Shown: one piece after another, positions 9,149 through 54,948 of the stretch
Numbering within the stretch: position 1 is the stretch's first letter
Layout of the letters: each line of letters begins with the position of its first letter
The notes under the pieces: generated by a model
What the model saw: the letters and a program-made list of their open reading frames with translations, nothing else
Database searches by the model: none
Told to the model about the DNA's origin: nothing
Translations under genes and position numbers: made by a program
Source of the DNA: Podarcis tiliguerta
Taxonomy: Eukaryota
Assembly: GCA_965153285.1 (NCBI GenBank)
Contig: OZ229113.1
Reading direction: 5' to 3' (one strand)
DNA: 64,000 nt

Positions 9149-9526
9149 GAATGGACTCTGTATTTTGTGAATTACCTAAGAGCCACCAATAGGGAGCTCT
9201 AGAATCTGACAGCTAACCAATTGGGTACTACCAAACAGCAACTCCTATTGCTGAAAGCAGGTAACCAGCAGGAAACGCTTCAGCTCAGCCTTTGCACTGT
9301 TGACTGAATACCCCCTGCTGTGCAGATAATGGAGAAAGCTCGTAAATTGTATCCCTTCTGGCATCCTGGCCAACTCTATTATTCTGTTGTAAACCCTGGT
9401 GCACCAGGAACCCAGAATAGCAGCAAATATAATCCGCTCATACGTCAGCAACTGATAAGACTTGTCAACCAGTTATTCCAAAGTCTTCCTAAATTATAAA
9501 GCTCCAAAATATAGGCCAAAAGAGAG
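9149..9526 (+). repeat. Copy A of a ~380 bp long-range inverted duplication (partner 54569-54948)
   Basis: Hand alignment to the reverse complement of 54569-54948 gives 23 substitutions plus one 2-bp indel. No TIR, TSD, TG..CA ends or poly-A/simple-repeat tail. Confidence 0.97.
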
Positions 9527-12479
9527 CAGGTTTTATTTTACTTACTCCTTTGGGAATATTTGGAAGAAAATTAATCTCTCTCCCTCTGCCTACTTTCGAA
9601 TGTCCTCTACCTAGTATAAGCATGTTAAAAATAAAATGCACATTTTGCCAGCAGTTCCTTTACCAACTTCCAGCTCTTTTAAAACTTTTATTTGTTATTT
9701 TAACAAGCGACAGGGTATCTTCTCCTTCAGTGCATAGGGCTTTACATGTGAAACTCCCTGTGCATTGAGGTGATAATATCCTCCTTAATTAGAAGCTGTT
9801 TAATGCTCTTGATTTAGCTTTTTTAATAGAAGAGTTACAAGCAGTCTGGCTGTGAGCAAAGCAGTATTAAAATCCCAGGCCAGGATAATGGTAAGTAGCT
9901 TTTTATTTGCTAAACTGACTACAGTGTTCCTTTTCTAGAACGAGTTTGCTTTATGCTCCAACAATCAGCCTATCAGTAAGGCCTGAGCCTAGCTTGGGTA
10001 GGGAGGCAGGCAGTTGTTGAGAACTGCTTGGTGATTTTGCAAGCTTTTGACAGATAGGAGGAAAAAATTAAAATATGTAAGGGTCGTCAAATCCATTCTT
10101 GTAATAAAGTTCAGCAACTATTCCATGGACCAGCATAACTTCAATGAGCCTCAGAAGGCCATCTGCCAAAGACATTAAATGCACATCTGAGTTGTTCACA
10201 AAGCAAAAACTACCTGGCTTTCCACCATAAGGTGAATTTTTAAAAAATAAAGATTGGAAATCTAACACACACACCCTTCTTTCTTTTTTTATAGATTCAC
10301 CCACAGGCATTTCAAGCAAAGCAAATAAATCAGCTGGCTAGTTTATATGTAAGAGAAACTGAAGGAAATTCTCTCCCTGTTTCCATGGTTATCATGAAGT
10401 ATCAGCCTCGTGAATTACCCAAGTCAGTGAACTATAGATTAAAAGGCACTTAACCACTCTCTGCCTTGCTTTCTCTGCTTAAAATATTGTTTCATGCTCT
10501 CGTTTTCCCTAAGCAGTAGGAAGTTTCAGGGCAGCATTCAGAAACAGTTCCCTTTGGAGGAATGGGAGCGCTAGGGAGTTGCATGGTGTTCTGTATAATG
10601 TTTGTTGATTTTCAGAGACGGGGGGCTGAGCAAGCAGGCACTGGCAGGCAAGGCATCCCCAACACATTTGAAGCTTCAAGGTTTCTTTTGCCAGGCAGTT
10701 GCGAAAACCTAGAATTGTTTTTGTGCTTTTAAAACCCCAGCGCATATTTAAAGAAAGAAAAGGAAAGACTTAGAACAAAGACCATGCTGATCTTTTCCAA
10801 TGGTGGTGTAGTGAAGCAGGAACTGGGGGAGGGGGGAGCGCAATGCTGGAACTTTTTAAAGGAGAGATAAAGTCATCTTCTAGAGTGCAAGTCAAGTTCC
10901 AAGTCCTTGCTTTGGCAGGTGAATGAGTGATAAGGAGCCTTTCATGCTTTGCTGCTGTTTTGTGACAAATTTGGTGAGAATGAGGAAATTGTTTAAGGAG
11001 AGGCTAGTTACCGCTCCCCTTTTCTTTGATGGGGTTTCTGCTTCGTGCCTGTAATTTGAATGGCAATATTTCCTTGCAAGATTGTTCTCCTTTCCAATTA
11101 AAAATTAAAGGTTGCATTTTGGCTGGCTGAAGAACTTTGGTGAAAGCTCAGTGTGTGTTTAGAAGCTGAACTTACATTGTCAGAAATAAGCACCAGTGAA
11201 TTACATGGAGTTGATTCCTAGGAAATGATGCATAAAATTAGGGTTGCCATATTTCAAGAAGTGAAAATATGGACACCAAAATTTGGCCAAAAATTCAACA
11301 CTTCTGTTATGGGCTGCCATATGCCCCAGGTTTTCCGGGACATTTGAACTGGTTTCCGAGAATTTTGCCTAGATGCAATTTTCAATGGATGTGACCCAGC
11401 TATGTTCGGAAAATTGTAGGTGTATGGCAGCCCTAATAGAATTGCAAACAATGCATAAAATTGTAGTCAGTACATATAAGTCATCAGGGTTAATTCCAAC
11501 ATGACAACTACCATAACACCCTTTGCCAGCTCACAACTCTATAAAAGTTAACTAATTGAGAATTATGATATTTACTGTTGCACCTTGCAAGGATATCATA
11601 GAATCATAGAGTTGGAAGATATCTATATAGGTATATCTTTATAGATATATTATGCACATTTTGCAAAAGCATTTCCCCTAACAGAATTCATTTTTGTCTG
11701 TTCATTTCACTAGTATACTCCTTTTTATGCACATTTCTCCCTGGTATATGCATTTTTGCACACACTACTTAACTGGAGAACTGCATTGCAAAATTCTGAG
11801 AATTATGCACTTTGAAGGATGGCTGTGTTTCAGTTTATGTATTGTTTGTGAAAATGCAAATTTGGTAGGTTTGAACTGAATCAAATTTGCCACCTACCCC
11901 CTGTTTTTAATGTTTCTGCACCATATTTAGCATTCTTGCTCCTGTGGGAGCGGAGACATGCTGCTAATACGCTAACAGGTTTATGGGCAAAATTATTTTT
12001 TCAAGGGTTTCGCCTTGTTGGCATTCCCAGTGTTGGACTAAGCACCCTGTTCTCCCTCTAGTTCTTTCAGGGCTTGCTTCTTTAATAACCAAGCTCTCAG
12101 TAAACTTGCTATCCATCACAGCAACCCTTAAAATTTGGCAGTTACAAGACGGATGGTATTCCACGGTTGAAAGGGAGCGCTGGCAATCTTTGCCATGGGT
12201 ATTAATAAAAATCAAGATATGAAACTGCAAGCACTCACGCGCACATGTGTACTTAAATGGGTTTGCATGCTGGCGAAGCCTTAGCTCTGACAATCTGGAT
12301 GTTGTACATTCATGAAATATATACGGCACACCTGAGTACATAGGGCATCACAGATGTCAGGGGGAAGCGATGCCTTGGAAACAGTGTACTTTAGAAAACG
12401 CAGCACTTCCCTGTCTTCTTGAAAGAAACTTTCCTCCTCCTTCTCGCTGCCACCCCACCCTGTTATTCTTTCCCCCTCT

Positions 12480-12790
12480 TGCCAGTTAAAATGAACTGTC
12501 AGAGCCTAGATAAAGATACAAACAGGATTGCATACTTTACCAAGGCTGGAGCGACTGGTAGGCTTTGATCTAATTCTATTTGCTGCTTTATGATGCATGG
12601 AGCTGTCAGATAAAGAGGTGTTCAAAAAAAAAAAAATCTGCCTGAGCTGTCAGCCCTGACAAGCCCTGTGATGGATTACAGAGAAAACAAAAGGGTTATC
12701 ACCTTAACCACAAACATTTATATCTTTTTTTTCCATAAGGGTGCCTCAATCAACTTGTAGTTATGAGGGCGCAGGTTGTTGTGAAGCCTG
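12480..12790. promoter_or_regulatory. Candidate Pbx-Hox/Meis enhancer (putative conserved non-coding element)
   Basis: TGATGGATTA (12669-12678, fits TGATNNATKR). CTGTCA at ~12497, 12603 and 12647, TGACAA at 12657, Sox-like AACAAAAG. TE-free. Confidence 0.5.
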
Positions 12791-13053
12791 TAGGAACACA
12801 GATCCGGTGACACATGTTGAAACAGCATTTAAAAAGTACAACACGCCTACATTGGTGCTAATATGATGCTGACATGGTGCAGTCATGCTTACTCAGATCA
12901 AAGGGGAGCACCCTATAGTTTTCCACAAGGAGGAGACTTTCTCGGGATAAAATGGTTCCGTTTTCAGCCTGTTCCTGTCTTGTCAAAGGTAAATAAGAGA
13001 AGGGCAGCATGTTAACTATGATCCTAAGACGGCTGAATATGATAGAAAATTCA

Positions 13054-13125
13054 GAGGAGGAGGAGGAGGAGGAGGAGGAGAAGAAGAAGAAGAAGAAGAA
13101 GAAGAAGAAGAAGAAGAAGAAGAAG
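13054..13125 (+). repeat. Compound microsatellite (GAG)9(AAG)15
   Basis: Read directly from the sequence. Confidence 0.97.
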
Positions 13126-13663
13126 AGTTTGTTTTGATGCTGCAAAAGCTGTTCAAGGCAAGAAGGGCATTTGCTGTTCCACACCCCTAACAGAAAAGTA
13201 ACTAAGCTACTATTCTCGTTTTTGCAAAGGTACCAGTCCTTGAGAAATGGTGGCTGCATCCAATAAATTTGACAAGACCAGGATGACTGCATTCTCAAAA
13301 ACCGCTTATTCTTTTCTTATTTGACTTAACTGGGATTAAATTGCAATTTCAGGCATTCACGTTGCACTTACTAAAGACACTTCTGGATGGTGATTTGTTC
13401 TTCTTTTTTTGGAGAGACCAAGCCCAGCATTCAGCAATTCCTATCCTTCCACTTGGAAGCACAGCAAATGGCAGAGGTACCTGCCTTAGCATGAGGGAAG
13501 TTGCATTGTGCTGAATTTCACAACTCCCAAGCAAAGCTGAACTGTTCTCTGCCGGCTCTGCCTCTTCTACTTCCAGCTTAGCATTCAGGAGTCCATGAAG
13601 TCCCAATGTGGAGATGCTCAAATGTACACAGGGTGTCCACCTCGCAGTTTAGAACACCTCCAC

Positions 13664-13890
13664 CAGTGCGGTGGAGTGGTTACAGTGTTGGACTCGGATC
13701 TGGGAGACCAGGGTTCAAATCCCCACTCAGCCATGAAGCTCCCTGGGTGACCCTGGCCCTGTCACTCACTCTCAGCCTAACCTCAAAGGGCTGTTGTAAG
13801 GATAAAATAGAATGGAGGGGATGGAGGGGAGAACCACGTGTGCCACTTGGAGCTCCTTGGAGGAAAGTTGGCATGTAAATATAATAAATG
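13664..13890 (+). mobile_element. tRNA-derived CORE/MIR-like SINE
   Basis: A box-like TGGAGTGGTT, B box GGTTCAAATCCC, CORE-like CTGGGTGACCCTGG...TCACTCTCAGCCT. Confidence 0.75.
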
Positions 13891-14054
13891 TTTATGCAGT
13901 CATTTATGCGGAGTTAAACACAAGCATAAGCTTATACACCTTTTCCTTTAAATATGTGCATAATGGCTTTTAAGGTCTATTATGCCATCCCCACTCCCAT
14001 CTCTCCAGAGTAATGTCTCTTTTAAGGTGGAATAGAGGAGAGACTGGTAAAGGT

Positions 14055-14842
14055 GGACACGGGTGGCGCTGTGATCTAAACCACTGATCTTCTTGGGCTT
14101 ACCGATCAGAAGGTTGATGGTTCGAATGTGCACGACGAGGTGAGCTCCAGTTGCTCTGTCCCAGCTTCTGCCAACCTAGCAGTTCAAAAGCATGCCAGTG
14201 CAAGTAAATACAGTGGTGCCTCGCAAGACAAAATTAATCCGTTCCGCGAGTCTCTTCATCTAGCGGTTTTTTGATTTTGCGAAGCAACCCTATTAGCGGA
14301 TTAGCGCTATTAGCGGTTTAGCGGCTATTAAAGGCTTAAGGGATTAGCGGATTAGCTGCTAAAAGGCTATTAGCAGTTTAGTGCCTTAGAAAAAGGGGGT
14401 GGGGAGTGGAAAAAAATTGCAGGAACTCGCAAGACATTTTCGTCTTGTGAAGCAAGCCCATAGGAAATTTGTTCTGCGAAGCACCTCCAAAACGGAAAAC
14501 CCTTTCGTCTAGCGGGTTTTCCGTCTTGCGAGGCATTCGTCTTGCGGGGCACCACTGTAAATAGGTACTGCTTGGTACCGTTGCTCTGTCCCAACTCGTG
14601 CCAACCCAGCAGTTCAAAAGCATGCCAGTGCAAGTAGATAAATAGGTACCACTGCGGCGGGAAGGTAAATGGCATTTCCGTGCACTCTGGTTTCCGTCAC
14701 GGTGTTCCGTTGTGCCAGAAGCGGTTTAGTCATGCTGGCCACATGACCCAGAAAGCTGTCTGTGGACAAATGGCGGCTCTCTCAGCCTGAAAGCAAAATG
14801 AGCTGGACTTAACCGTCCAGGGGTCATTTACCTTTACCTTTT
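14055..14842 (+). mobile_element. Sauria SINE interrupted by a MITE and carrying an internal duplication
   Basis: Head GGACACGGGTGGCGCTGTG and TTTACCTTTACC tail. The block GTTGCTCTGTCCC...CCAGTGCAAGTA occurs twice (~14151-14207 and ~14580-14637). Confidence 0.88.
14211..14557. mobile_element. Tc1/mariner-type MITE nested in a Sauria SINE
   Basis: TIRs CAGTGGTGCCTCGCAAGAC / GTCTTGCGGGGCACCACTG and TA TSD. Interior is short TTAGCGG-like tandem repeats. Confidence 0.9.
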
Positions 14843-15368
14843 AGATGAGACACCAAGGAAACAATCCATATCCATAATTTCATTACATAACAGTTTGAGA
14901 GCCCCTCTTACAGCTGGCTATATGTTAAGCATATCAAAATTTGATCTGGACCTTCTCCATATTTCATAATTAAAGTGACAAATGTGTCTCATTTAGAAAT
15001 GTTGATAAAAGGGAGTGGGGAGCAGCCTCTTGCAACCTGGTTACCCCTTCCTCATATGAAAGTATTTGACTCTAGAAATCTCTCCTCAGAGTAGTTAGAC
15101 TGGCTCCCACCTTGCAGGAGGGACTGGCTCCTTCTGCAGGCCCCATAGGCTTTGAGGGAATGGACTGCTTTTAATGAAAGGGCTGGTGCCATGCTTTTTT
15201 TATTGCAATTACCTCTATGTTTAAAAACAGATTTTTAAAAATACGTATATAGTTTTAATTCTATTAAGGTTTAATTGTTTTTTAATTATTGCTTTTTCTA
15301 TGTTTTTAGCAATTCTTGTTTTTATCTCTAAGCTGCCTTGTGTTCCTTTAGGGGAAAAGGTGGTTATA

Positions 15369-15399
15369 GATGATGATGATAATGATGATGATGATGATG
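15369..15399 (+). repeat. (GAT)n microsatellite, probably the tail of an old L2-type fragment
   Basis: Read directly. Preceded by AAGCTGCCTTG...AAAAGGTGGTTATA. Confidence 0.85.
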
Positions 15400-15914
15400 G
15401 ATAGCATTATGTTTTCAATTATTGTATTATTATGTAATTTCCAAATATGTCTGCTTTTGGATTTGTTATTTCCTCAGGTTAAAAATGTAGGTGTTAACAG
15501 TGTGAAAATAGAGCTCACTTGTGATCTATAAAACCCCTTATTCTCATAATTGTGCAGTTGATTTGATTTCCAGATTTTTCAAGAAATTAACTCATTGTCT
15601 GATTTCTCAAGGCTGCTTCCAACTGGACTTTAATATTTGTGCATTCTATAACATTTTAGAGTACACAACCCAATTTCTTGCCGCTTATTGAATTACACCC
15701 TAGTACACTATTCAACTTGGAAAACCCAAGTCTCTCTTTATTTTGTTCGAGATTATGGCTGTTTTCAGACATATAATTTATTACAATAACAAATCTTGGC
15801 GTATTGTGATGGAACAAGCCTAGTCAAGCCTCAGGTTTACACTGTCCTTTGATGCAGCCACAAGGGGGAGCTTGTAAGCTTTTGCCTCTGGTTTTTATTG
15901 TTGTTGTTTATTAG

Positions 15915-16090
15915 TTTCCGTGTGCTGCTCTGGTGCCGGTTCGTCAGAGCAGCTTCGTCATGCTGGCCACGTGACCTGGAAGTGTCTGCGGACAGCGCTG
16001 GCTCCCGGCCTATAGAGTGAGATGAGCGCACAAACCTAGAGTCTGTCAAGACTGGCTCGTACGGGCAGGGGTACCTTTACCTTTACCTTT
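15915..16090 (+). mobile_element. Sauria SINE, 5'-truncated
   Basis: Closely matches the 3' half of 34203-34564. (ACCTTT)n tail. TTATTAGTTT repeated on both flanks. Confidence 0.9.
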
Positions 16091-16830
16091 ATTAGTTTAT
16101 TCATTAGTTTTCTCTTCTATCCTTCCTCCTGCAGGAGCACAGCCCACACCAGACACAAAATACAATAATAATAAAATAATAAGTACAAATTGTATCAAAA
16201 CTCAAGGCTATGAATCTGAACGCACATCAGATACAGTGAAACCTGAGCAGATGGATTCTTCACTCCAGCTATGTACCAAAGGCCTGGATAAAGAAATGCA
16301 CAATCCTTTGACTTTTAAAAGTTGTCGGTTGCAGGGGCAACTAAACTGCCCTGGAAAGGGAAGTCAAATGGGGTGCCGCCACAGAGAATGCCCATAGTGC
16401 AGTGTGTCACTCTAACCCTAAACTCTGGTTTGTTGGAACAAGCCAGCTTCATGACATGACTTGAAGTTGATTTCTTTCAGATAAACCATAGTTAAGATGG
16501 AAGTGGCTTTCCTTTTTTCCTCCTATTGATTATAATGGGAGGGATTAACTATGGCAACCCCAGAGCCATTCCTGTGAGCGTGTCAGAGAAATGAAAGTGC
16601 TTTGGAGGAAACACCCACCCCTGCCACATCCTTGTTCCCTCAGTCCACCAGCAGAGCATCGCTGGTGGAAAATCTGTGATGGCGAGCATGTGTGTAGATG
16701 TCATGCCAGCGTTATACACCTCTCTCTGCTGAAGGAGCAGCACTCAATGATGCTTCCTATGGCTCACTCAAGTAGCTTCATTATTTCGCTTATTAAATGT
16801 ATATACTGTCCATCCTAGGACCTCAGAGAG

Positions 16831-17310
16831 TGTCAAGGCTTCAGGGAATCCTATCCCTCCCCCAGTGGCCGCCAAAAAGCAGATAACCAAAAAGAGTTCT
16901 TACCACGTAATTTATTCAGTATTCATAGAGAGAGAGACAAAGGAAGGCTGTCTGTATTAAATAATGGCGTTGTTCCAAGTAAAGCCCAACCCTCTCCGTC
17001 TCCCTTATTCTACGTCATCCCTGTGCCGGCTGATCAGAGCTTTCTGTTTTACCACTCTCAATGCCTGCCTGGTCCTGAGAGAGGGGGGCTCAGGAATGCT
17101 CTCCACAGACACTGTCAGCTGTCTCTCCCCCAGTGCTGCTTCTTCCTGCTATTCCTCATCCAATATTTCCCAGTTTTCCCCCTCTGGAGCCTCTGAACTA
17201 TGACCTTCTGCAAACCACTGTTCTAAATCTATACTGTTCTCTTGTTATCGGGAAGGTCCAGGAGAAGGGGGTGTGGCCCCCACCATTCCTCCTCAGTCCA
17301 GTCCCTGACA
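16831..17310 (-). mobile_element. Solo LTR
   Basis: TGTCA...TGACA termini. 5-bp TSD GAGAG (16826-16830, 17311-17315). TTTATT at ~16911 gives AATAAA on the minus strand. Confidence 0.8.
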
Positions 17311-18159
17311 GAGAGGTTTACAATATAAAAACACATACACACCAGTTTTCCAGTGAGGTTTGGGTTGCCTCCTCAAAGTCTTGTCAGTTTCAAAAGCAGC
17401 TTGCCACATGGCATGACGGTTTACTGGGGGGGTGTAGGAATACCATTCACCATCATCTTATAAGTATGCAGGTCTGTGGATCCTGGCTGTGTGGAGAAGA
17501 GAATGTGACAAGCACCAGTGTTCAGAGTAACAAGCCAGATGGAAAACTGCAAACATCAAAACAAGAAAAATCTCTCAGGATTGTCTTTCTTTTTCAGTGC
17601 ACCTATGTAAATCCAGTGTAATGACTGCTACTGCTGGACAAAACTGACCTCTATAAATGTCTAACTGGAAAAACAACAACACCAACACATCCTCAAGTGT
17701 GAGAAATTGAGATATGATGAAGAGGAATATGGAAATTCAAATATTACAGTAGAGAAGCCCCCAGAGTTCCTAATGTTCTCAATAAATCACATCCCAATTG
17801 AGACAAAATCAATTGTCAAATAAACTCCACATTTCTTATTGAATAACGATTGATTAAAATGAAGGGAAAAAGTTGTTAAGCAAATTGCTCATAAATAAAG
17901 ACCAAATCCCTTTTAACCCACTTTTGTGGTCTGAGATCGAACTTGTCTCTGGTAAAAGATTGATGATGAGTTGTTGCAGCAGCGAGGTAAACATTGTTTT
18001 TGTGCTTGCCTCTGCCAGTGTTACATTTCTGACATACCTTAGCAAACTCTCTCTGTGGGAGTGTGTATGCACATGCACACAAACGTTCACAAACTGTATG
18101 ATGTCCAACCCTGTGCTTCCAACCAAGGCAACCAGTAAAACTCCTTTTCAAATCATCAC

Positions 18160-18302
18160 CACCATTTATTTATATGCCACGCATCTGACTGGGTTGCCCT
18201 AGCCACTCTGGGCAGCTTCCAACAAATTAAAACATCAAACATTGCAAACCATCAAATATTTTAAAACTGATGTCTTTTAAAAGTCAGGTAGTTGTTTATC
18301 TG
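18160..18302 (-). mobile_element. L2 LINE 3' UTR fragment
   Basis: CATCTGACTGGGTTGCCCTAGCCACTCTGGGCAGCTTCC is complementary to the L2 3' UTR seen elsewhere in the window. Confidence 0.7.
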
Positions 18303-18401
18303 TTCCAAAATATTGTTCGAAAAGTTGAAAGGCAAATAGATTTGGGTGGACTATTATTAGCATGCATGGAGTCTTTACTTGAAGACGAATACAAACATCA
18401 A

Positions 18402-18863
18402 ATTATTATTATTTATTTATTTATTTATTTATTTATACACCACCCATCTGGCTGGGTTTCCCCAGCCACTGGGCGGCTTCCACAAAGACCAAAAATACAC
18501 TAAGATGTCACACATTAAAAAGTCCCCTGAACAGGGCTGCCTTAAGATGTCTTCTGAATGTCAGGTAGTTGTTTATCTCTTTGACATCTGATGGGAGGGC
18601 GTTCCACAGGGCGGGCGCCACTACTGAGAAGGCCCTCTGCCTGGTTCCCTGTAACCACACTTCTCGCAGTGAGGGAACCGCCAGAAGGCCCTTGGCGCTG
18701 GACCTCAGCACCCGGCAAAACGATGGGGGTGGAGACGCTCCTTCAGGTATACTGGGCTGAGGCCGTTTAGGGCTTTAAAGGTCAACACCAACACTTTGAA
18801 TTGTGCTCGGAAACGTACTGGGAGCCAATGTAGGTCTTTCAAGACCAGTGTTATGTGGTCTCA
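18402..18863 (-). mobile_element. L2 LINE 3' fragment
   Basis: Minus-strand translation LRSS..GLLAVP...GTRQRAFSVVAPALWNALPSDVKEI..YLTFRRHLKAALF is an L2 ORF2 C-terminal motif. (TAAA/TAA)n tail. Confidence 0.9.

Positions 18864-25316: not shown

Positions 25317-25319
<3 letters not shown>

Positions 25320-25371
<52 letters not shown>
25320..25371 (+). repeat. (CTTT)n microsatellite
   Basis: Read directly from the sequence. Confidence 0.95.
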
Positions 25372-28281: not shown

Positions 28282-28292
28282 AGTTTCGTTAG

Positions 28293-43244: not shown

Positions 43245-43735
43245 TCTGAAAGCCCAGCACCGGCTGCCAGTACATTACTGAGGAAAGTTCAGGGTATTGC
43301 TGTTAGTGTGCAAAGCCCAGAATGGCTTTAGACCATGTTGCCTGAAGGACCATCTTGTCCCTTTTATGCTGGCCCAGATCCTTGCAATCATCAGGAGAAG
43401 CCCTCCTGACTGCCCCACAATCAACTTATCTTTGTTTAGTTTCTGTGTGGACTTTTATCATAGTGGCAGCAGTCATTCGGAAGACTTTGGCTATGGAAAT
43501 CAGACAGGCACCTCCAATCCTGATATTTCCCTGGCTGCTGAAATTGCGTTTGTTTCACCAATGTTTTTATTTTTTTATTTTAAGAGAATGTAAGAGAATC
43601 TGATTCAATGTTGGTCATATGTTCTGTATTTTATGGTTTTATAATTTTATGGTTTTGCAGTACACCACGTTGATACTTTTAAAGGAGTTGGTGGTTTATA
43701 AATGTTCTTATAAATACAATTAAACAGATAAATAA
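43245..43735 (+). mobile_element. Old, degenerate L2 3' fragment
   Basis: Remnant ORF2 motifs (LLLV.KA.NG..P..LKD.L.P, L.SSGEALL.AP, LKL.LF) and an AATAAA-type tail. Confidence 0.55.
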
Positions 43736-46189
43736 ATTCCCCTTCCCCAACAGTAGAAATGGAAGGAAGGGAAAGCTACTAAAGAGAAAATACTTGCAAT
43801 GGAAGCCTATACGTGCCTACTCAGATTATGCCCCACAGCAGTGGAGTGGCTATCAGGTAAGTGGGGCTCTTATTGCACCACTTCCACCTACCCGAGAGTA
43901 GGCCCTATGGGGTTGACATCTGTGAGTCGATAGGCATAGACTTAAGCGGCAATAGTAGCTTCAAATGATTTTCTAGATGATACATTTTGTGCAGCTCCCT
44001 GAGATCCCCTGGGATGAAGGGCAGTCTAGAAAAACAAACAGGAAACATAAATTTTGCTTTTCGTTCTTTCCTGAGAAACAAACCCAATATTGTGGTGGTC
44101 AGTAACATTTTATTATCCTGTTGATACCAATGTGTTCAATAGGGCTTACTTATTCCCAGATAAGTGTGCATAGGATTGCAGCCTAATCAAATAATATTTG
44201 TATGATTAATCAGCTAAGAAATCTTCAATTGGGTGACAGCCCTGTTTAGTATTAGCATAATTTGGATGTTTTAAAATTGCCGTAATTGTTTTGCAGAATT
44301 TGGACACAAAATATGGTTTATATTTTGCACAAGAGAATACCTGAATTGCATATGTTATGAGTGGTGCTAGTTTCCAGAGACTTATATCTGATACTGTCTA
44401 TATATTTGTTCCCTAAGCTCATAAATGTGTATGTGGTAGGTATATTTGTACATTGCGTGTACAATTTAAGCACCCTCATATTAAAAACAGAGCAAAACTC
44501 CCTGTTCTTAATGATTTTAATAAGAATTGCAGATGTTATCAGCTGCCTCTAGTCTTGAATGGGGTTTAAGAGTATAAACTGACCCTCAGTCCCTTATCCC
44601 AATTAAGAAAGAATTTAGATCGCTCCTACAGATGGTGGCGAGTGAGATACGACAGGGTAAAGTGAAGCTTATTACTCTATCTCTGGGAACAATGACATTA
44701 TCATACCAATCAGTTCCAGTCGTGTTACTTCCAGACAGGAGCGTGAGGATTTTGCAGTTATCTTCCTGAAGAGGCAAGACCCTTGTAAACCAGTTGAGTA
44801 AACTGGTTCTTCTGCCTTTGCCTTGTCATATCATATCATACTGCAATTAGAGGTAAGGCTGACGAAACAGGGCTGTCTTTGCAGTGACGTTTGAAGGCTC
44901 TGTGACTGAAATGGCATGAATGCACATAAAATTGTTTTCATTTCATGTCCTTAATTTTGCTCAGTTTATTTCAGAGGCATTAAAAATACAACGGGTCTCT
45001 TTTCTAAAATGTAGTCTTCGTTTCTGAAAGCAGATGGCATAGCCACAGCAATGTGGAACGCCCATTTAAAAATCGATCCGGGAGGACGCAATACACCAGC
45101 AGCAATCTCCAGACATGGGTTTGTTCTTAATTCCATAACATCCAGTTCACATCATTTTCTGTAGGATGCGCTGCCTGTGCAATCTGCACCATGATGCATG
45201 TCCTCCTGTATTGCAGTGGATGCAATTGCTACCAAGGCGCAGTAATCCAGAGAAAGTTAATAGTGCTATTGAAATTTATGGAATCTAATCACATAGCTAA
45301 GCACTTCAGTCATGTTGATTTCAATGGGACAATGTGCACTGATCTTTCTGTGAACTGCTCCCATGCAATGTTCTTATTATTCTCCGCCTCTTAATTGAAA
45401 AGCTTTGTGTCTGAGTTTTCATTCCATGATATAAAAGTATAGTAAAATAGACAGTTGGCATCTTGGTCTGGGTCCATATCTCCTTGTGCTTGGGAGGCTG
45501 TTCCTAAGACAGTACAGGTATCCCACCCAAGGCACAGGAGATATTGCCCATGATATCAGACATCCATTCTCCTGCTGATCTTGCAGTATGATGCATTCCA
45601 TCATCTGCCAACCCTTCTGCATCCTACAAAGAACAAACTGACCACAACAGAATAAATGGCATAAATCTGAAACCAGAAGTGGAAATATTCAAAAACCCAT
45701 GGAGGGACCTTCCAACCTCTAAGAATATTCTAAGAATGACCTTAAGGTGGCCAATGTGAAACCACTGGATTACTATTCATCAAGAGGTTCATTGCTACCA
45801 CTTATGGATTTAATCATTTGTGTGATGAACAAGCACATGTCAACCTATCAAATTACCCTTATTTAGATTATGATGGCACTGAAAGCAATGGATTACCCCC
45901 CCCCCAAAAATAGTAATTTAAAATGGATATTAAAGTCAAGGGGGCTTAGAATGAAAGAAAACCCCTGCTGGGTCTGAAGAAAGGTTCACCTAGTTCAGCA
46001 TCCTGTTCTCACAGTGGCCAATCAGATGCCCACAGGAAGCCTCTAAGCAAGATAGGAGGGCAGCAGGGCTTTTCCCAATTGTGATTCCCAGCAACTAGTA
46101 TTTCGATACTAGAGGTGGCACAGAACCATCAAAGTGTGTGGTGAAAGCATGTTAAGGGTAGAAAAGAGCAAATGTGGCTTGTTTGTGTT

Positions 46190-46394
46190 TTTCTCGGTAG
46201 TAGCACCCACCCTGTGGAACACCCTCCCATCAGACGTCAAGGAGATAAGTAACTATATAATCTTTAGGAGACATCTGAAGGCAGACCTGTATAGGGAAGC
46301 TTTTTACTGTGTAATGTTTTATTATGATGTTGTGTATATTGGAAGCTGCCCAGAGTAGCTGGGGCTGTCCAGTCAGATGGGTGGGGTACAATTA

Positions 46395-46434
<40 letters not shown>
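46190..46434 (+). mobile_element. L2 LINE 3' fragment with (TTA)n tail
   Basis: Encodes FSVVAPTLWNTLPSDVKEISNY..FRRHLKA. 3' UTR GGAAGCTGCCCAGAG...CAGATGGG. Confidence 0.85.
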
Positions 46435-46435
<1 letters not shown>

Positions 46436-48359
46436 CCCTTCTGCATTGTTTCCCTCATTTCCTTTGCACTTTTATAGCTGCTTCTTGTTAATATTCATCT
46501 GCCCAATTACTTATTCCTGATTTCTCCACGTACATTTAGTGTTATTTTTAAAGCAGGCAATGATGATATGTGGAATTAGTAATATAGTTGGTGAGAGTGT
46601 GTTTAATTCAAGTTATCTTTAGAACAGACCTTTCCCTATACTGAGAGAAACATGGCATTCGCAGATTTATTCCTGTATGCAATGTATTTATTGATAGATT
46701 ACTAAACATTTAGTAGCAGTAATAGAAGTTTGTACATTGAAGAGATTGCACAAAATGGTTGCTTCCATCTCTGTGTGCGTTTTTGGAGTCTCTCTGTCCA
46801 CTGGCGGTAAAATGAAAATAACCAAGATCAGGCATCAAGGAGAACAGTTAGGTACTAATTATACGCAGATAAAATATTCCTGTTCTTGAGTGGTAGAGTT
46901 TGACAAGAAAATGGAATCTTCATGGGGAGGAGGGGCGATCTGTAAAGCTGAATGAATAGACTTAAGTAAATATTCAATACATGCTGAGGAAGTTACATTA
47001 TTGGCCACCATTCTTAAACCTACCCATGCCAAACTCATCATGGTATTACAGAGTAACTTCAACAGAAGATAGGTGCAACAGTTGGCTGCAGAAAAGGGGG
47101 GGGGGAGCAGTAAAAATAACCGAAATATTTGAAGGAAGAAATAATTTTCAAACATTGTGGTGCAGCCATTTGACCCTGACACCCATTACTTCCAAACAAA
47201 TGTGACAGTATGAATCAACTGCAGTTTTGTTGCTAATAGACTTGATTAATGCTGAGAAAAAATAATATACATGGTATCCTCAACGGGTGTATAACTACCA
47301 TCTTAAATGGAGTTTCCTGATATTTTAAATGAAAGTTGTAGTTTCTTTTGGCAGCCGCTGCAGCACATAACTAACGTTTCATATTACACACAAGAATTAT
47401 TTTTGGTGCCATTCTTAATGTGAAACTTTTTTTTTTTTTTGCTTTTGCTAAAAAAGATGTAATTGCAACACTTAAATATGATCATTATTAGTATAAAAAA
47501 AATAAATAGAATAAAAACTTCTGGACTAGAGTTGAAAAGAGTAAACTTCTTGGCTGTTTCCTCTATTACAGCCAATGTCTTTTTATTGTCTGTTTTCATC
47601 TCCATTTTACTTTATCTGCGAAACTACTTTGCATTTCAAGACATTTCCACTCACCTTGAGTTCTTGGTTCAAAAAGAAACAATAAAGTTTAATCTTTTCA
47701 CTTGACAATGATGTATGGGTTTGTTGAAAAACACTTTTCAGGTATTATCATTTAAAAAAGTCCCTCTCTCTTTTTAGTTTGTCTTCCCCTTTCGATACAG
47801 AGACAAATATAAGATGCAATGCACATAGAAGGGGTTTATCAAGAGTTGAATTAATACTAATTAGAAATTAAATCCACCCGAATGCCCCTTCTAAGAGCAC
47901 TTCAGCAAAATCCTTTTCTAGGCTTGGTTATTTTTTTGTAGGCACAGAGCTTTCTAATAATCCTACTTGTGCTTAATTATTTTAAGCACCAGATTTGAGA
48001 TCCTATTTTTCCACATGACAGACCATTGGTCAGGGAACTTGTACCACTTTGCAAATAAAAAGCTTCCAATGACAATCCCCTTTTCTTTGCTTATTAACCA
48101 TGGTATATTCAAAGGTTGCTTTCTCGACAGTAGTGGTCCTTTATAGCCAGGTATGAGCGTTCACTCACATATAATTTACATATCGTTTTGGGACTTCCTC
48201 CCCTACCTTTCCACAGAGACAACAAGAACTGCAACACCTAGAGAGAACATGGCGTGCTTCCAGATGGAAGTTTATTGTGGTGTTGCACATGCACATAAGT
48301 TATCTGTAGAGTCCACACAGCATCATTATTTCTATTTTCCATGAATATTTGAACCACTT

Positions 48360-48471
48360 AATCTCAGGGTTGTGAGTTTGAGCCCTATGTTGGGCAAAAG
48401 ATTGCTGCATTGCAGGGAACTGAACTCGATGACTTGTGTGGTCCCTTCCAACTCTACAGTTCTATGATTCT
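48360..48471 (+). mobile_element. Short tRNA-derived SINE with CR1 3' end (Squam3-like)
   Basis: Ends in GGTCCCTTCCAACTCTACAGTTCTATGATTCT, the canonical CR1 terminus. Degenerate B box GAGTTTGAGCCC. Confidence 0.7.
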
Positions 48472-48699
48472 TTGTGCACCACTTTTTTGATTAAGTGGTA
48501 TATAAATCTTGTTGAATAAATACAATATATATATATAATGTAATCAAAATGCCAGCTCCCACTTTTTTTTTTACATTGAATCTGGATTTCCCCTTCAGGT
48601 CCCCCCCCCCCCCCAGAAAGTGCAGCTAATGGGTTCCTGTTGTATCTCAACAGGACTGCTGTTCTACAGGGCAGGGGTAGCCAACTTAAATGATATTCT

Positions 48700-49150
48700 T
48701 TTTTTTTATAAAAAAAATAATTTTTATTGATTTTTCCATGTATACTTCTTCTAATGAAATATCTTTAATGATTTTTCATATTGTCCACCCTCCTCCCCTG
48801 GATTTCCCCCATACCTCCATTTTGTTTTAGTTCCATATTGTTCACCCTGCGTATTGTTCCCCCCAAATTTTCTCAATACATATAGTCATATTTTTTGTTG
48901 TATACAGTTGTGATTGTTTACCCAGGCCCCGCCAATGAGTCCATTTCTTTATGTTGCCTCTTCATATATGTTGCAAATTTCCCATTCTCTTTTAAAGTCT
49001 TTGTTGTCCTTTTCATGTAATTTTTCTGTTAGTTTTGCCAGTTCTTCATATTCCATAAGTTTCCTTTGCCATTGTTCTTTCATCGGTATTTCTTCTGTCT
49101 TCCAAGTTTGTGCTAATATAATTCTTGCCGCTGTTGTTGCATACCTTAAA
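48700..49150 (-). mobile_element. L1-clade LINE 3' fragment
   Basis: Encodes YATTAARIILAQTWKTEEIPMKEQWQRKLMEY.ELAKLT, homologous to 22655-23252. Poly-T on the plus strand marks the tail. Confidence 0.8.
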
Positions 49151-49190
49151 TGATGTTCTAACACTGAGCAGTGAATCATCCCTGCATCAT

Positions 49191-49388
49191 TTAGGAACAC
49201 AGGGTGCTGCCTTGTGCCAAGTCAGACCAACGGTCAATCTAGTTCAATATTGTCTACTCAGACTGGCAGCAGCTCCCTAGGGTTTCAGGCAGAAAACTTT
49301 TCCAGCCCCACCTGGAGATGCCTGGGATTGAACCTGGGACCTTCTGCATGCGAAGCAGGTGTTCTGCCACTGAGCTATGGCCCTTCTT
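49191..49388 (-). mobile_element. tRNA-derived squamate SINE with CR1-like tail
   Basis: On the minus strand, A box TAGCTCAGTGG and B box GGTTCAATCCC. Related copies at 50840-51003 and ~1405-1550. Confidence 0.8.
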
Positions 49389-50839
49389 CCCTTGTACCAA
49401 CTGCAGCACCTGCCTATCACCCAGTGGGCAACCTCAGCACACAGGCACATTATCCAGGGCACAATAACCAGCCATGTTTGATGCAGGTACTACGATGAAT
49501 ATAAACTCTCGCAGCATTTCATACTGGCCCATTACCTCCAACCAAATCTTTAGACCATAGCTGTGGTTCTTTCCCCCTGGAAAACAGCGTGTCTCGAATC
49601 CCATTGGGTGATGCGGAGTCAAAGCTTTAAATTAATCAGGCTGGTCATATAGCTTGCATTGGAACAAAAAGTTATTTAACTTGTTGTGTCTTTCTTTGAG
49701 CTTAGGAAAGAATGCATAAAATGTATGATTTGTTCTGCAGGAGCACAGCACAGAAGTGGCCGCCAATGCAAACAGACTGCCTCGCTGAATAAATGAAGAC
49801 CGCTTGACTGATAATAAAAAAAGTTTTGGGTGGTATTTCTCACTGGAAAACTGGTGTCTGAATTTATAACATATATAATTCAGTTTCCAAATAGCTACCA
49901 AGCCTTGGTAGGTCCCTTAATGAGGAGAAAAATACTATTTCAGCGGAAGGCTTTCCAACCTTTTCTAAAACTTTTTTTTCTTTTCGGTTATGTAAAGTTA
50001 AACAGCTGAAGCATGAGACCAGTTTTCTGACATGGATTAATTTCCTCAAGGAAGTAAAGCAAGCAAGGGCATTCCAATGCAGCCAACTGACATTGTGACC
50101 AATTTTTAAACTGCTTTCCGCTATACCCTTTGCTGGAAAAGGATGAAGAAAATGAGGGTGAGTGTGGATTATTAGGATTTAATAATCGACCTATTACAAG
50201 ATACATTTTATTCCTAGGATTTCCATGCCCCGCCCCCAAACCAGAATGATTAGTGAATTTACCATTTCACTTTTGTGGTGCATTCCATTCTATTCAAGAG
50301 TCAGGCCAAAATTCTCCACCGGTGTTCAGAAACACTTTGGAAATTATTTCCACATGTCCAGGAGTCAGTCGTAATGATGACCGCTAATACCAATCCTTTT
50401 GTTACAGTATTAAACTCAAAAATAGACCACTGTTGTCTTTGATTAACATAAGCAGAGTAAAGAACAAAGACGTACCACTAGCATCGTGACAGTTTTATGG
50501 CTGCCATGTGAAGAAAAACGTATGCTTATTAGCATTGAAAATATAAAACATTCCTTGTTTTAGCTGGCTGTTAAAGTGTTATGATCTTCTCTCTCTGCTT
50601 CAGAACCTCAAAACCACAGACAAGTTACCTATTTCCTGCTCTGCACATCTGGGGAACTTGGTAGATAAAGAAATTCAAAAACCCGGGGCACTGGACCAAA
50701 CAGAAGGTCATTACAGATCTTCCCATGTGGTCTCAGCACTCTGGCCTGCCATACTTTAGTCTTTGACTATATTTATTAGCTGTCCCACAACAAAAAGTTC
50801 TCAAAGAACACATTTAACACAGACGTATACAGAAATACT

Positions 50840-51003
50840 TAGGAACACAATAAGCTGCCTTAGACAAAGTCAGATGACCGTTGGGTCCATCTAGCCCAGT
50901 TTTGACTGGCAGATTTCCAGGACTTCAGCCCTATCTGGAGATGCTGGGGTTGAACTGGGCACCTTCCACATGTTCAGCGGGCGCTTGACCACTGAGCTAC
51001 AGC
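50840..51003 (-). mobile_element. tRNA-derived SINE, same family as 49191-49388
   Basis: Shared AGGAACA...AAGCTGCCTT...AGTCAGA...CTGGAGATGC...CCACTGAGCTA. Confidence 0.7.
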
Positions 51004-51129
51004 TCAGTGTAGTAAGATATCCTCTAAGGCATATCCAGTAGCTCTTCATGCATCAGCACTAGCAGGTGAGAGGTGTGATAGGGCCACCTGCTCTAACAGG
51101 GTTGCAAAATGGACACCATGAACTGTGTA

Positions 51130-51429
51130 CAGTGGTACCTCGGGTTAAGTACTTAATTCGTTCCAGAGGTCCGTTCTTAACCTGAAACTGTTCTTAACCT
51201 GAAGCACCACTTTAGCTAATGGGGCCTCCTGCTGCTGCCGCACCACCAGAGCCCGATTTTTGTTCTTAGCCTGAAGCAAAGTTCTTAACCTGAAGCACTA
51301 TTTCTGGGGAGGCGTTGCCAGGGGATCAGTTAGGTAAGGGGAGGAACCGCCCTGCCCACACAACAGAACTCCTCAACAATTAGTTGAGGCGTACGTAACC
51401 TGAAGCATATGTAACCCGAGGTACCACTG
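51130..51429. mobile_element. Tc1/mariner-type MITE with a foreign 79-bp insert
   Basis: TIRs CAGTGGTACCTCGGGTTA / TAACCCGAGGTACCACTG, TA TSD, internal TAACCTGAAGC repeats. Confidence 0.9.
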
Positions 51430-54325
51430 TAATATATTGTTCACTGTTACTGAAATCAAATCATGCAATGTTTCCTTTTTCGGCAGGAAACAATTTGGCA
51501 TGTTTTCAGATAGATAGGCGAAAAGGTGGGCTGTGACTTTCCACAGTCTCAGGAGAGACATGAAACTAGTACCTGAAGTATAGGGTTCCTTCAGCTGAGG
51601 GCAGGAGGAAACAGAGCTTTGTTTTAGGATCAGGCAAAAGAGGCAAAACCTGCTTCCTCCAACTGCTGAAATCCTATGTGGCTTGGATGGTTCATATCCA
51701 AGTGCCGTTGGACAAGGTGAAGATTATTTGTTTACTGAAACGTAATATTTATAATGCAGCATTCCCACTGATATCAGTCCCTAAGATGGCTCAACACAAC
51801 CAGCTAAAACAATCCGTACAATACCAACAAGAATAAAAGCAACAATATTGCCAGTTTGCAGCAGTAAATCAATAAGGTAATCACAAATAAGGTAATCACA
51901 ATTTTTTTTGTTGGCAGGTGCCAAATTCCAAAGTCTGGGTGCCACCACATTCCCATTGGCTTCCCAACTCAACTCAGAAGTTGGGAACACCAGAGCAGAG
52001 CCTTAGCAGAAGATCTTAATGACATGACAGGATGAATTCATATGGGAGGCCCATAATCTAGCCAGAGCTCTCCAGCACTATATATTTTATCCTATATCCT
52101 ATATCAGTTTCAGGGCCACCAAGATTTCCTGTGCTAGTGCAATTCTTAGTTGGGAGGAGCAAAATTTGCCTACCTCAGCCAATCGCCCAATCCCGCCTGG
52201 GGAGGCGTTGCCAGGGGATCAGCTAGGTGAGGCGAGGGACCGCCCTGCCCACACAACAGAACTCCTCAACAATTAATAACTTGCCCTTCTATGCCAGCTT
52301 TCCTGATTAGACAGACACGCAGACTCCATATTGGGCTCTATGGACTCCATATTGGATTCTATACATCTTCCCTTTTTTAGGTATAAGAAATACTCCTTGG
52401 TGTGTATGTGTGTGTAATTTGAGCTATGAATATTCAGGTTATGAATAAAAAGAGAGATGAATCTACAATCAGATAAATTAATAATCAAATCTGTAATTAG
52501 TGCTAATTAATGAATCATCAGTTCAAGCTATACATAAGTGCCCAAGAGAATACTAAGGCAACATTCTGATAGAACAAAACACCATGGGTATGTCTCTTCA
52601 GAAGATCAGGGTTTATTTTAACCAGAGGCTCCAATTTTTCTTCCAAACAGAAAGAGACTAATGAAAGGTACCCAGAGTAACACAGAGAAGCAGTGCCAGT
52701 TTTTATCCACCAAGATGAAAGTGAGATAGATAAACAAGTTTTAACAAGAAATTACATCCAAGGAGCCCCAAATTCTATTTTCACTGTAAAGATTCCTCTA
52801 AATCTAGAGACACTCCATGGATTTAATTAACTACACTTCTTTTACTGGTTTCACAGTACAAAGAAGGCATGGTTACAAGGCAATGATGGCTTCTCCTGGT
52901 ATTATATAGGAGCTCATTTGAGCCTGACAATGGGTGAGGTGAGAAAGGATGGGAGGCAGGGGCAATGTTAGGATGGCCACATAAGCGTCATCAAAAAAAG
53001 AGGGCAGAAATTTGCATATGCTTATTTTAAAGATGTAAAACAAGCAATAGATTATTATAATCAAACTGAGATACAACACATTTCATCACAAAGAGGAAGA
53101 TTGTGACCTGCTGGCCAGAGTGCCTGCTTAGGCTGATGTCCAAGGTGCTAACTGTTGATGGGCAATTTCAAGACCCCCTCTCTCCCTTCTTAGGGTTATC
53201 ATGATCTTTCAACCAGACATCCCTTCACACAGAGGTCTGCCTTCTGAAAACCAGGACACATACTATTCAGTGTGCTGCTTGTGGGTGATGTGTTGTGATA
53301 GTCCTTCCACATTCTGCATGTGGTCCTCTGTGTCCAACTCTATTGACAGGGCCAGATTTAGATCAAGAGAGGCCCTAGGCTACTCCACTTGTGAGGCCCC
53401 TCCCCAATCCTCACCCTCACAACTAGAAGGAAGTGGAAGTGTTATAAACAAAACTGAGTGAAGACAAGGATGATGACGGGTATTTAAAATTCTGCAACTC
53501 ACAATTTCTCCTCTAAAGGACATAAGATATTATTGTTAAATACCATGGTGATTTTTTTAAATGCATAAAATTAACACTGAAAAACTTTTGCAATAACTGA
53601 ACTGTATAAACTTTTTGTGACCTGGGCAGGCCGGGTCTTCCTGTTATATACCTGCTGAGATTGACAAGGCATCTGATCCTCACCTGAATCTCATAGCTCT
53701 CCTGATGAGTGTTTGGGTCTGGCCACCAGATACCAGGCACTCTACTAATCAAATTAGGCCCCAGTGTTTTTGTTACAATCCCCTTCTCAACTAAGTAATT
53801 TTAATCTAGAATTTAAATTCCCAAAACATTCTTATTTGTTCATTTGAGCAAGTAAACTAGTGCTCTCACTTCATTACAAACAGTATGTCTACCTGCAACA
53901 CACTGCTCCTCTTCCTTTCACAGATATTTTGTTGCCATTGCAACTGTAGCTGTCTCCGATTAGTTATCATTTAACTCTTGGGGGAAATAATTAGCATCAC
54001 ACGTCAGATGCATGGAAGTTGCCAAACCAATTAGCCAACTAGAAGGATTACTGTTAATAGCACCAGTTTTCCTGTAACTTGATATTGTTGGATAGTTCTG
54101 ATGAACTGCAAAAGCATTTTTAGTTTGCTTTCTGTTGCCACCCTGGAACTTTTCTTTATTAGTGCCACTTTGTTTTGTATGATTCCTTGCAAATGAAGGA
54201 AAACAACTTTTCTGCTTGTATATGTTGATAATATAATTTTGGTTACTGAGGACACACAAGATTGTACAAAAACAAGATTGGGTACAGGCCTGGCCAGGAC
54301 ATAGGCGCCCTGACTGTGACAAAGG

Positions 54326-54327
<2 letters not shown>

Positions 54328-54356
<29 letters not shown>
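54328..54356 (+). repeat. (GT)n microsatellite
   Basis: Read directly from the sequence. Confidence 0.9.
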
Positions 54357-54568
54357 CGCTTGCTTGCTTGATAACAGCTGTTGGGAACTTCAAGGTCCCT
54401 GCTCTCCCTTCTGACAAGGTCCCTGCTCTCCCTTCTTTGTACTGGACCTGGAGACTCCAAGAGAGAGCATTCCATGTCAAGGAGGGCAAGTGGGCACCCT
54501 ATCAAATGGCAGGGCAGGAGCTACACAGAGCAGGGCCTTTTCACTGGTGGTGCCCATTGTATGCCTCA

Positions 54569-54948
54569 CTCTCTTTTGGCCTGTATTTTGGAGCTTTATA
54601 ATTTAGGAAGATTTTGAAATAACTGGTTGACAAGTCTTATCAGTCACTGACGTATGAGCGGATTTTATTTGCTGCTATTCTGGGCTTCTGGTGCACCAGG
54701 GTTTACACCAGCGTAATAGAGTTGGCCAACATGCCAGAAGGGATGCAGTTTATGAGCTTTCTCCATTATCTGCACAGCAGGGGGGGTGTTCAGTCAACAG
54801 TGCAAAAGCTGAGCTGAAGCGTTCCCTGCTGGTTACCTGCTTTCAGCAATAGGGGTCGCTGTTTGGTAGTACCCAATTGGTTAGCTGTCAGATTCTAGAG
54901 CTCCCTATTGGCGGCTCTTAGGTAATTCACAAAACACAGAGTCCATTC
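54569..54948 (-). repeat. Copy B of the ~380 bp long-range inverted duplication (partner 9149-9526)
   Basis: Reverse complement reads GAATGGACTCTGTG...GGCCAAAAGAGAG and is colinear with 9149-9526. Confidence 0.97.

What the first reader, a model, noticed from the sequence alone, without database searches (positions are those of the whole stretch)
9149..54948. ~380 bp non-TE-like element duplicated in inverted orientation 45 kb apart
Seen: 9149-9526 equals the reverse complement of 54569-54948, with 23 substitutions (19 transitions, 4 transversions) and one 2-bp indel (~93-94% identity by hand count). Homology ends sharply. The element has no TIRs, TSD, TG..CA ends, Pol III boxes or tail, I found no third copy, and it resembles no TE I recognise. 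It is complex and motif-dense like the enhancer-type blocks nearby. Inference, competing models: (1) a long-range RNA duplex in a host pre-mRNA that loops out 45 kb (ADAR substrate, back-splicing or exon skipping); (2) an old paired regulatory element kept similar by gene conversion between inverted arms, which could also allow recurrent inversion of the enclosed segment, conceptually like the FLNA-EMD inverted repeats; (3) the inverted duplication left by a staggered-break inversion; (4) two copies of an uncatalogued low-copy repeat. G-U-compatible changes split about evenly between strands (9 vs 10), so the substitutions give no strand-specific support for the RNA model.
Basis: partly seen in the sequence, partly recalled or inferred. 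Interest (0 to 1): 0.9.

Follow-up and report, generated by a model that had tools for sequence, protein, structure and literature searches.

The report
Small inverted duplicate flanking 45 kb
A 380-base stretch of non-coding lizard DNA occurs twice, in opposite orientation and 45 kb apart; it looks like a decaying by-product of an old break-and-repair event or a rare uncatalogued repeat, and nothing suggests it is a working element.

Summary
9149-9526 (+) matches the reverse complement of 54569-54948 with 19 transitions, 4 transversions and one 2-bp indel (93.4% identity, K2P 0.064). Homology ends abruptly at both ends, and the window holds no third copy.

The element is non-coding. It matches no Rfam family or tRNA, does not fold unusually, and shows no TIRs, no LTR ends in both copies, no tail and no target-site duplication at shared boundaries. 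The differences are spread evenly, as in neutral decay; there are no conversion tracts and no protected core.

One outside relative exists: a 78-aa Logan ORF, P0001. It lies nearer arm B (8 aa differences) than arm A (12), and A and B differ by 12. If P0001 comes from another species, this argues against homogenisation of the arms.

A control search places the window in a lacertid lizard.

Best reading (0.45): a local inverted duplication made during break repair, either an inversion with one staggered break or a template switch, now drifting neutrally. Main rival (0.35): two copies of an uncatalogued low-copy repeat. The RNA-duplex and gene-conversion/NAHR models gain no support.

The finding is ordinary and of low interest.

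The parts
9149..9526 (+). Arm A of the inverted pair (378 nt). It contains CCAAT at 9186-9190 and 9217-9221, ACGTCA at 9442-9447, and TATAAAG at 9495-9501, which starts 31 nt before the end of homology.
   Evidence: Motif positions were read directly.
54569..54948 (-). Arm B of the inverted pair (380 nt). It is the reverse complement of arm A with 23 substitutions and 2 extra C (G on the + strand) in the homopolymer run.
9527..54568 (.). Enclosed 45,042-bp segment. It is the candidate inverted segment if the pair arose with an inversion. It holds SINE-like repeats and a BovB fragment, and shows no coding signal.
   Evidence: Its orientation relative to an outgroup could not be tested.
9122..9161 (+). 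Imperfect 20-bp tandem duplication (17/20 matches) straddling the outer boundary of arm A. A degenerate copy of the first 13 nt of the element plus the 7 nt before it sits just outside the arm.
   Evidence: Read. Such short tandem duplications cover 1.4% of the window, so one at any of the four boundaries has p of about 0.055. This is marginal and unexplained.

Best explanation
The pair is a local, DNA-level inverted duplication of an ordinary non-coding 380-bp stretch. It was created once during repair of chromosome breaks. One route is an inversion of the enclosed 45 kb in which one breakpoint was cut in a staggered way and filled in, which leaves the sequence between the nicks at both ends in inverted orientation. 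The other route is a replication template switch that copied a nearby stretch in reverse orientation. Since then the two copies have diverged independently and neutrally to about 6.4%. With an assumed squamate rate of 1-2e-9 per site per year, that is very roughly 15-30 million years; this dating is inference. The duplication itself is shown. The mechanism and the inversion of the enclosed segment are inferred.
For: Anatomy: the two copies are inverted, lie only 45 kb apart, share the same sharp boundaries and are the only copies in 64 kb.

No transposon hallmarks: there is no TSD at shared boundaries. By reading, there are no TIRs and no tail, and TG..CA ends appear only in arm A. ARAGORN finds no tRNA head and Rfam finds nothing.

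Size and form fit inversion-linked inverted duplications in Drosophila: median 321 bp, range 46 bp to 1.9 kb, non-repetitive sequence, and in 12 of 18 inversions only one breakpoint duplicated (PMC1885836).

Neutral decay: ts:tv is 19:4, differences are evenly spread, and the index of dispersion is 0.93.

Outside relative: pairwise amino-acid differences to P0001 are A-B 12, A-P 12 and B-P 8. These are ultrametric for ((B,P),A), as expected if P0001 is the arm-B orthologue in a related species and the duplication predates that split.

Rarity: only one relative turned up among 5.8e9 clusters and 1.84e9 representatives, whereas a SINE-like control ORF from the same window found 17. For a rare dispersed family, two independent insertions within 45 kb would be improbable.
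Against: Nothing shows that the enclosed segment is inverted relative to any outgroup. Genome-wide copy number was not measured.

The 8:4:4 split of unique changes among A, B and P0001 does not reject a star tree (p=0.37), which is what a small burst of a repeat family would give.

Identical boundaries in both copies are also what complete copies of a short mobile element show. The species and flanks of P0001 are unknown, so it could be a third paralogue.

The protein databases sample lizard non-coding DNA very thinly: neither of the window's own arms is in them, and a unique junction ORF found nothing. Rarity there is therefore weak evidence.
Confidence: 0.45

Rival explanations
1. Two copies of an uncatalogued low- or mid-copy interspersed repeat of lacertid lizards, inserted independently or by local hopping. 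P0001 would be a third family member.
For: Both copies share both boundaries. A third related sequence exists and is roughly equidistant from both arms: unique changes are 8/4/4 and a star tree is not rejected, p=0.37. Repeats dominate the window, with SINE-like families and BovB, and lacertid repeat libraries are incomplete (my own knowledge). Arm A has a 6/7 TSD-like match, GCTTTAT/GTTTTAT, offset 3 nt from the end of homology.
Against: There is no TSD at boundaries shared by both arms, arm B has none at all, and there are no TIRs, LTR ends, tail or Pol III head (reading). The window has no third copy, even a diverged one. Only one relative appears in the two large protein collections, against 17 for the SINE control. 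No exact match of two arm-conserved 25-26-mers was found in JGI metagenome or IMG/VR contigs, though those collections are poor tests for lizard DNA.
Confidence: 0.35
2. A paired regulatory element, promoter- or enhancer-like, kept in two inverted copies by selection and/or gene conversion, and able to mediate recurrent inversion of the enclosed 45 kb by homologous recombination (FLNA-EMD-like).
For: The element carries two CCAAT boxes, a CRE-like half site, and a TATAAAG that starts 31 nt before the end of homology, so that a transcript would begin about where homology stops. All of these are intact in both arms, which face each other across the segment. If P0001 is an orthologue, the element has persisted in more than one species.
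Against: At 6% divergence most short motifs survive by chance. Differences are evenly spread, with no protected core and no conversion tracts, and the longest identical run of 54 nt is the chance expectation (p=0.49). Arm B is nearer P0001 than arm A, so there is no sign of concerted evolution. 54 nt of uninterrupted identity is well below the roughly 130-450 bp usually quoted for efficient mammalian homologous recombination (my own knowledge; not tested in lizards). The sequences downstream of the two TATA boxes are unrelated, and arm A runs straight into TTTT and AATAAA.
Confidence: 0.07
3. The arms pair as a 380-bp RNA duplex within one long primary transcript and loop out 45 kb (an ADAR substrate, back-splicing or exon skipping).
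For: Either strand could form a very stable duplex if co-transcribed: RNAduplex gives about -680 kcal/mol on both strands.
Against: Any inverted repeat would give such an energy. Wobble-compatible changes show no strand bias (10 vs 9). No host gene is evident: no Pfam hit in the 10 long ORFs tested and no exon-like paralogy. 45 kb is far beyond the usual spacing of edited inverted repeats (78.3% of edited Alus have an inverted partner within 1 kb, PMC4053975). Expression could not be tested.
Confidence: 0.04
4. Assembly artefact, or a nuclear copy of organelle or foreign DNA.
For: None positive. A sharply bounded piece without transposon hallmarks is also what NUMTs look like.
Against: The arms differ by 6%, so they are not collapsed or duplicated haplotypes. 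Both lie in one gap-free stretch. Skews are only mild, no open frame appears under the mitochondrial code, and there is no tRNA. Viral contigs give no match.
Confidence: 0.03

Closest known systems
Inversion-associated inverted duplications (staggered-break model; Ranz et al. 2007, PMC1885836)
   Same: Short stretches of non-repetitive sequence present in inverted orientation at the two ends of a segment. The size range matches (median 321 bp, 46 bp-1.9 kb), often only one breakpoint region is duplicated, and the duplicates decay afterwards (mean identity 88%).
   Different: Those cases were proven by outgroup comparison and involve Drosophila inversions of much larger size. Here the inversion of the 45 kb is not shown, and the host is a lizard.
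FLNA-EMD inverted repeats and other NAHR-competent inverted low-copy repeats
   Same: Inverted arms a few tens of kb apart flanking a unique segment.
   Different: Those arms are kilobases long, nearly identical, and homogenised by gene conversion. Here the arms are 380 bp, 93.4% identical, and their longest identical run is 54 nt, with no sign of conversion.
Templated insertions and template-switch (FoSTeS/MMBIR-type) inverted copies (my own knowledge)
   Same: A short copy of a nearby sequence placed in reverse orientation, with no transposon hallmarks and sharp junctions.
   Different: No clear junction microhomology could be defined, because donor and recipient cannot be told apart without an outgroup.
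Inverted Alu pairs as ADAR substrates (PMC4053975)
   Same: Inverted repeats of about 300 nt that could pair in RNA.
   Different: Alu partners usually lie within about 1 kb and belong to a very high-copy family. Here the spacing is 45 kb, copy number looks low, and no transcript is known.

Membership tests
Interspersed transposable element (MITE / SINE / solo LTR / Helitron) | Target-site duplication at the same element boundaries in each copy | tested here: not met
   no boundary offset within +/-6 nt gives a TSD in both arms. Arm A alone has GCTTTAT/GTTTTAT (6/7) offset 3 nt; arm B has nothing.
Interspersed transposable element (MITE / SINE / solo LTR / Helitron) | Terminal signatures: TIRs, TG..CA LTR ends, A-rich or microsatellite tail, Helitron TC..CTRR ends, or a Pol III tRNA-like head | tested here: not met
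   Reading: the ends are GAATGG... and ...AAGAGAG, with no TIR and no tail. TG..CA is seen only in arm A (arm B has CG..TG). ARAGORN finds 0 tRNA-like genes and Rfam gives 0 hits.
Interspersed transposable element (MITE / SINE / solo LTR / Helitron) | Many dispersed copies in the genome | tested here: inconclusive
   The window has no third copy. There is one outside relative, P0001, against 17 for a SINE-like control. No genome-wide DNA search was possible.
Inversion-associated inverted duplication (staggered breaks) | Inverted copies of otherwise non-repetitive sequence at the two ends of a segment, tens of bp to about 2 kb long, with sharp ends | tested here: met
   size range from PMC1885836. 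'Non-repetitive' is established only for the window and the protein collections.
Inversion-associated inverted duplication (staggered breaks) | Enclosed segment inverted, and the duplicated stretch single-copy, in an outgroup | not testable with these tools
NAHR-competent inverted low-copy repeat (FLNA-EMD type) | Long, near-identical arms with concerted evolution | tested here: not met
   The arms are 380 bp at 93.4% identity, and the longest identical run of 54 nt is the chance expectation. Arm B is nearer P0001 than arm A.
dsRNA-forming inverted repeat in a transcript (ADAR substrate) | Substitutions biased towards duplex-preserving (G-U) changes on the transcribed strand | tested here: not met
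   10 versus 9.
dsRNA-forming inverted repeat in a transcript (ADAR substrate) | Both arms inside one transcript; A-to-I editing clusters | not testable with these tools
No gene was recognised in the window.
Structured RNA gene | Match to a covariance model or unusually stable fold | tested here: not met
   Rfam at gathering score gave 0 hits. E-value mode gave only chance-level miRNA hits, E 0.4-0.7. Fold z-scores are -2.3 and -1.3.

The most novel reading that the evidence does not exclude
The arms are a conserved pair of promoter-like modules (two CCAAT boxes, a CRE half site, a TATA box starting 31 nt before the end of homology) that face each other across a 45-kb domain. They have been kept in more than one lacertid species. 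They act together, either as convergent promoters whose transcripts pair or as paired boundary or looping elements, and could occasionally flip the domain.
Probability: 0.05. Interest if true: 0.6.

Novelty: new member of a known kind. Interest (0 to 1): 0.18.

Why it matters
If the inversion reading is right, this would be a clean vertebrate example of a small inversion that carries the inverted-duplication scar described for Drosophila. It would be useful as a marker for dating a 45-kb rearrangement among lacertid lizards, but it is not a new mechanism. If the element is a low-copy repeat, it only adds an entry to a lizard repeat library. Nothing found here points to a function.

Tried and rejected
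- Larger ancient palindrome: no other co-linear inverted homology at DNA level. Three SINE pairs near the same anti-diagonal are within chance.
- Inverted paralogous genes driven by the two promoter-like arms: six-frame piece-against-piece BLASTP found only the arms and known repeats.
- Coding potential of the element: the frames are broken differently in the two arms.
- HMMER search of 1.84e9 representatives: the second hit, P0002, is a translated satellite with 7 repeats and is spurious.
- Arm-B junction ORF 54885-55124: no relatives.
- ESM Atlas with P0001: nothing usable.
- Exact 25-26-mers from arm-conserved blocks: no match in JGI metagenome contigs (two scans) or IMG/VR.
- The search of earlier findings by sequence for the arm and for the arm-B flank: blank.
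- NUMT idea: only mild skews and no open frame under the mitochondrial code. Not excluded for a control-region piece.
- Type-3 Pol III or snRNA promoter idea: the PSE-like spacing is wrong, arm A runs into TTTT within 10 nt, and no small-RNA model matches downstream.
- Strand-skew test for inversion of the interior: the composition profile is too noisy.
- Pfam on the 10 long ORFs: nothing.
Full report
**Observation**

The repeat finder reports two abutting inverted pairs that together make one 378/380-nt pair. A global alignment gives 378 aligned columns, 19 transitions, 4 transversions and one 2-bp indel in a C-run. The p-distance is 0.061 and K2P is 0.064. The 9 versus 10 split of A/G and C/T differences is also right.

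Homology stops abruptly at both ends. At most a T/C difference at a CpG on the left, and a doubtful AGG on the right, could be added. BLASTN with word size 7 and nhmmer find no third copy in the 64 kb, even a diverged one. The flanks of both arms are unique in the window. Both arms lie in one gap-free stretch; the only N run is 59875-60074.

**Context**

The window is squamate non-coding DNA:
- GC is 41% and CpG o/e is 0.28.
- It holds several copies of SINE-like families and a BovB-type reverse-transcriptase tail at 29826-30212.
- A control protein search with a SINE-derived ORF (18511-18774, minus strand) returned annotated proteins of Podarcis lilfordi and Zootoca vivipara, plus ENA contigs. 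The genome is therefore a lacertid lizard; the species is not determined.
- I found no gene. There is no Rfam family at gathering score, no tRNA and no Pfam domain in the ten long ORFs tested.
- The CpG-rich spots coincide with repeat copies.

**What the element is not**

- It is not coding. Its open frames are short and are broken differently in the two arms.
- It matches no RNA family even at E up to 1, apart from chance-level miRNA hits. It folds only slightly better than shuffles, with z of -2.3 and -1.3.
- It lacks transposon hallmarks. A systematic scan with boundary offsets of +/-6 nt finds no target-site duplication at boundaries shared by both arms. Arm A alone has GCTTTAT/GTTTTAT, offset by 3 nt, and arm B has nothing.
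- The ends are GAATGG... and ...AAGAGAG. They are not inverted repeats and not a tail. TG..CA occurs only in arm A, while arm B has CG..TG.
- It is not part of a larger degraded palindrome.
- It does not head a pair of inverted paralogous genes.

**How it has evolved**

The 24 differences are spread as evenly as random placement predicts. The longest identical run is 54 nt against a simulated mean of 56 (p=0.49), and the index of dispersion is 0.93. There is thus no conversion tract and no protected core. The pattern is plain neutral decay, with ts:tv of 19:4 and several changes at CpG sites.

**Outside evidence**

The longest stop-free frame inside arm A (9248-9472, minus strand, 75 aa) was used as a probe for mis-called ORFs in the large protein collections. 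It found exactly one relative, P0001. This is a 78-aa ORF on a 1192-bp Logan contig with no name or accession. The exhaustive HMMER search of 1.84 billion representatives added only a spurious satellite translation.

Codon-by-codon comparison gives these results:
- Changes unique to arm A: 8. Unique to arm B: 4, plus the indel. Unique to P0001: 4.
- Pairwise differences: A-B 12, A-P 12, B-P 8.

These distances are ultrametric for ((B,P),A). That fits P0001 being the arm-B orthologue in a related species that split after the duplication. A star tree is not rejected, however (p=0.37), so P0001 could equally be a third copy of a small repeat family. P0001 differs from both arms by several percent, so it is not simply another individual's copy of either arm.

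If P0001 comes from another species, the arms do not group by species.

The sensitivity of this approach is low:
- The window's own arms are not in the collection.
- A unique junction ORF found nothing.
- A very abundant SINE found only 17 clusters.

So the result rules out little beyond a very high-copy family.

**Best reading**

I weigh two readings.

The first is a local break-repair duplication. The anatomy is the one described for inversion-linked inverted duplications. [quoted passage not shown] A reverse-orientation template switch to a site 45 kb away would leave the same picture. Close proximity of the only two copies seen, inverted orientation, sharp ends and the absence of any insertion signature all fit. 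I give this 0.45.

The second is an uncatalogued low- or mid-copy repeat. Shared boundaries, a roughly equidistant third sequence and the general dominance of repeats favour it. The missing hallmarks and the scarcity of relatives count against it. I give this 0.35.

**Functional models**

These gain no support.
- For an RNA duplex, any inverted repeat gives a large pairing energy (about -680 kcal/mol on either strand). Wobble-compatible changes show no strand bias, no host transcript is evident, and the 45-kb spacing is far beyond the usual one. Of edited Alus, 78% have an inverted partner within 1 kb (PMC4053975).
- For NAHR or gene conversion, the arms are too short and too diverged, and no conversion signature is present.
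- One feature is worth recording. The element has two CCAAT boxes (9186, 9217), an ACGTCA (9442) and a TATAAAG (9495-9501) that starts 31 nt before homology ends. A transcript would therefore start about where the copies stop matching, and the two arms point into the enclosed segment.
- All of these motifs are intact in both arms, but at 6% divergence that is expected by chance. The downstream sequences are unrelated, and arm A runs straight into TTTT and AATAAA. I keep this as the low-probability novel reading.

**Limits**

- No lizard genome collection is reachable with the remaining tools.
- Genome-wide copy number, presence and orientation in other species, expression and editing are therefore untested. 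The exact searches that would settle them are listed under next steps.

**Verdict**

This is a real, exact and statistically certain inverted duplicate. It looks neutral and belongs to a known kind of feature. Interest is low.

Noticed in passing
window 9122-9161: A 20-bp imperfect tandem duplication (17/20) straddles the outer boundary of arm A, so the first 13 nt of the element recur in degenerate form just outside it. The chance of such a feature at one of the four boundaries is about 0.055.
   Followed up: partly
window 9149 and 54948: The arms sit almost symmetrically in the window, 9,148 nt from the left end and 9,052 nt from the right end, with the centre of symmetry near 32,048. This is probably a coincidence of tiling.
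   Followed up: no
window 51304-51382 and 52197-52275: A 79-nt direct repeat at 95% identity, 893 bp apart. It may be a small local duplication or the ends of a short element.
   Followed up: no
window 8018-8282 and 63491-63643: Hairpin-like inverted dimers of a short repeat carrying the GGGAGTTGTAGTCC motif, with the two halves abutting (I13).
   Followed up: no
window 6187-6283: A 49-bp unit repeated twice at 95% identity. It contains an octamer-like TATGCAAAT and a TGACGT motif.
   Followed up: no
window 14100-14800, 23430-24260, 28040-28280, 34030-34560, 15910-16090: A CpG-rich repeat family, with copies 72-91% alike, accounts for all the CpG-island-like spots in the window. These spots are therefore not promoters.
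   Followed up: partly
window 29826-30212: A 128-aa open frame that looks like the C-terminal part of a BovB/RTE-type LINE protein. It gets no Pfam hit.
   Followed up: partly
window 18511-18774 (minus strand): An ORF from the SINE-like repeat matches annotated 'proteins' of Podarcis lilfordi and an EFCAB11 isoform X5 of Zootoca vivipara. Those annotations probably include exonised or mis-called repeat sequence.
   Followed up: no
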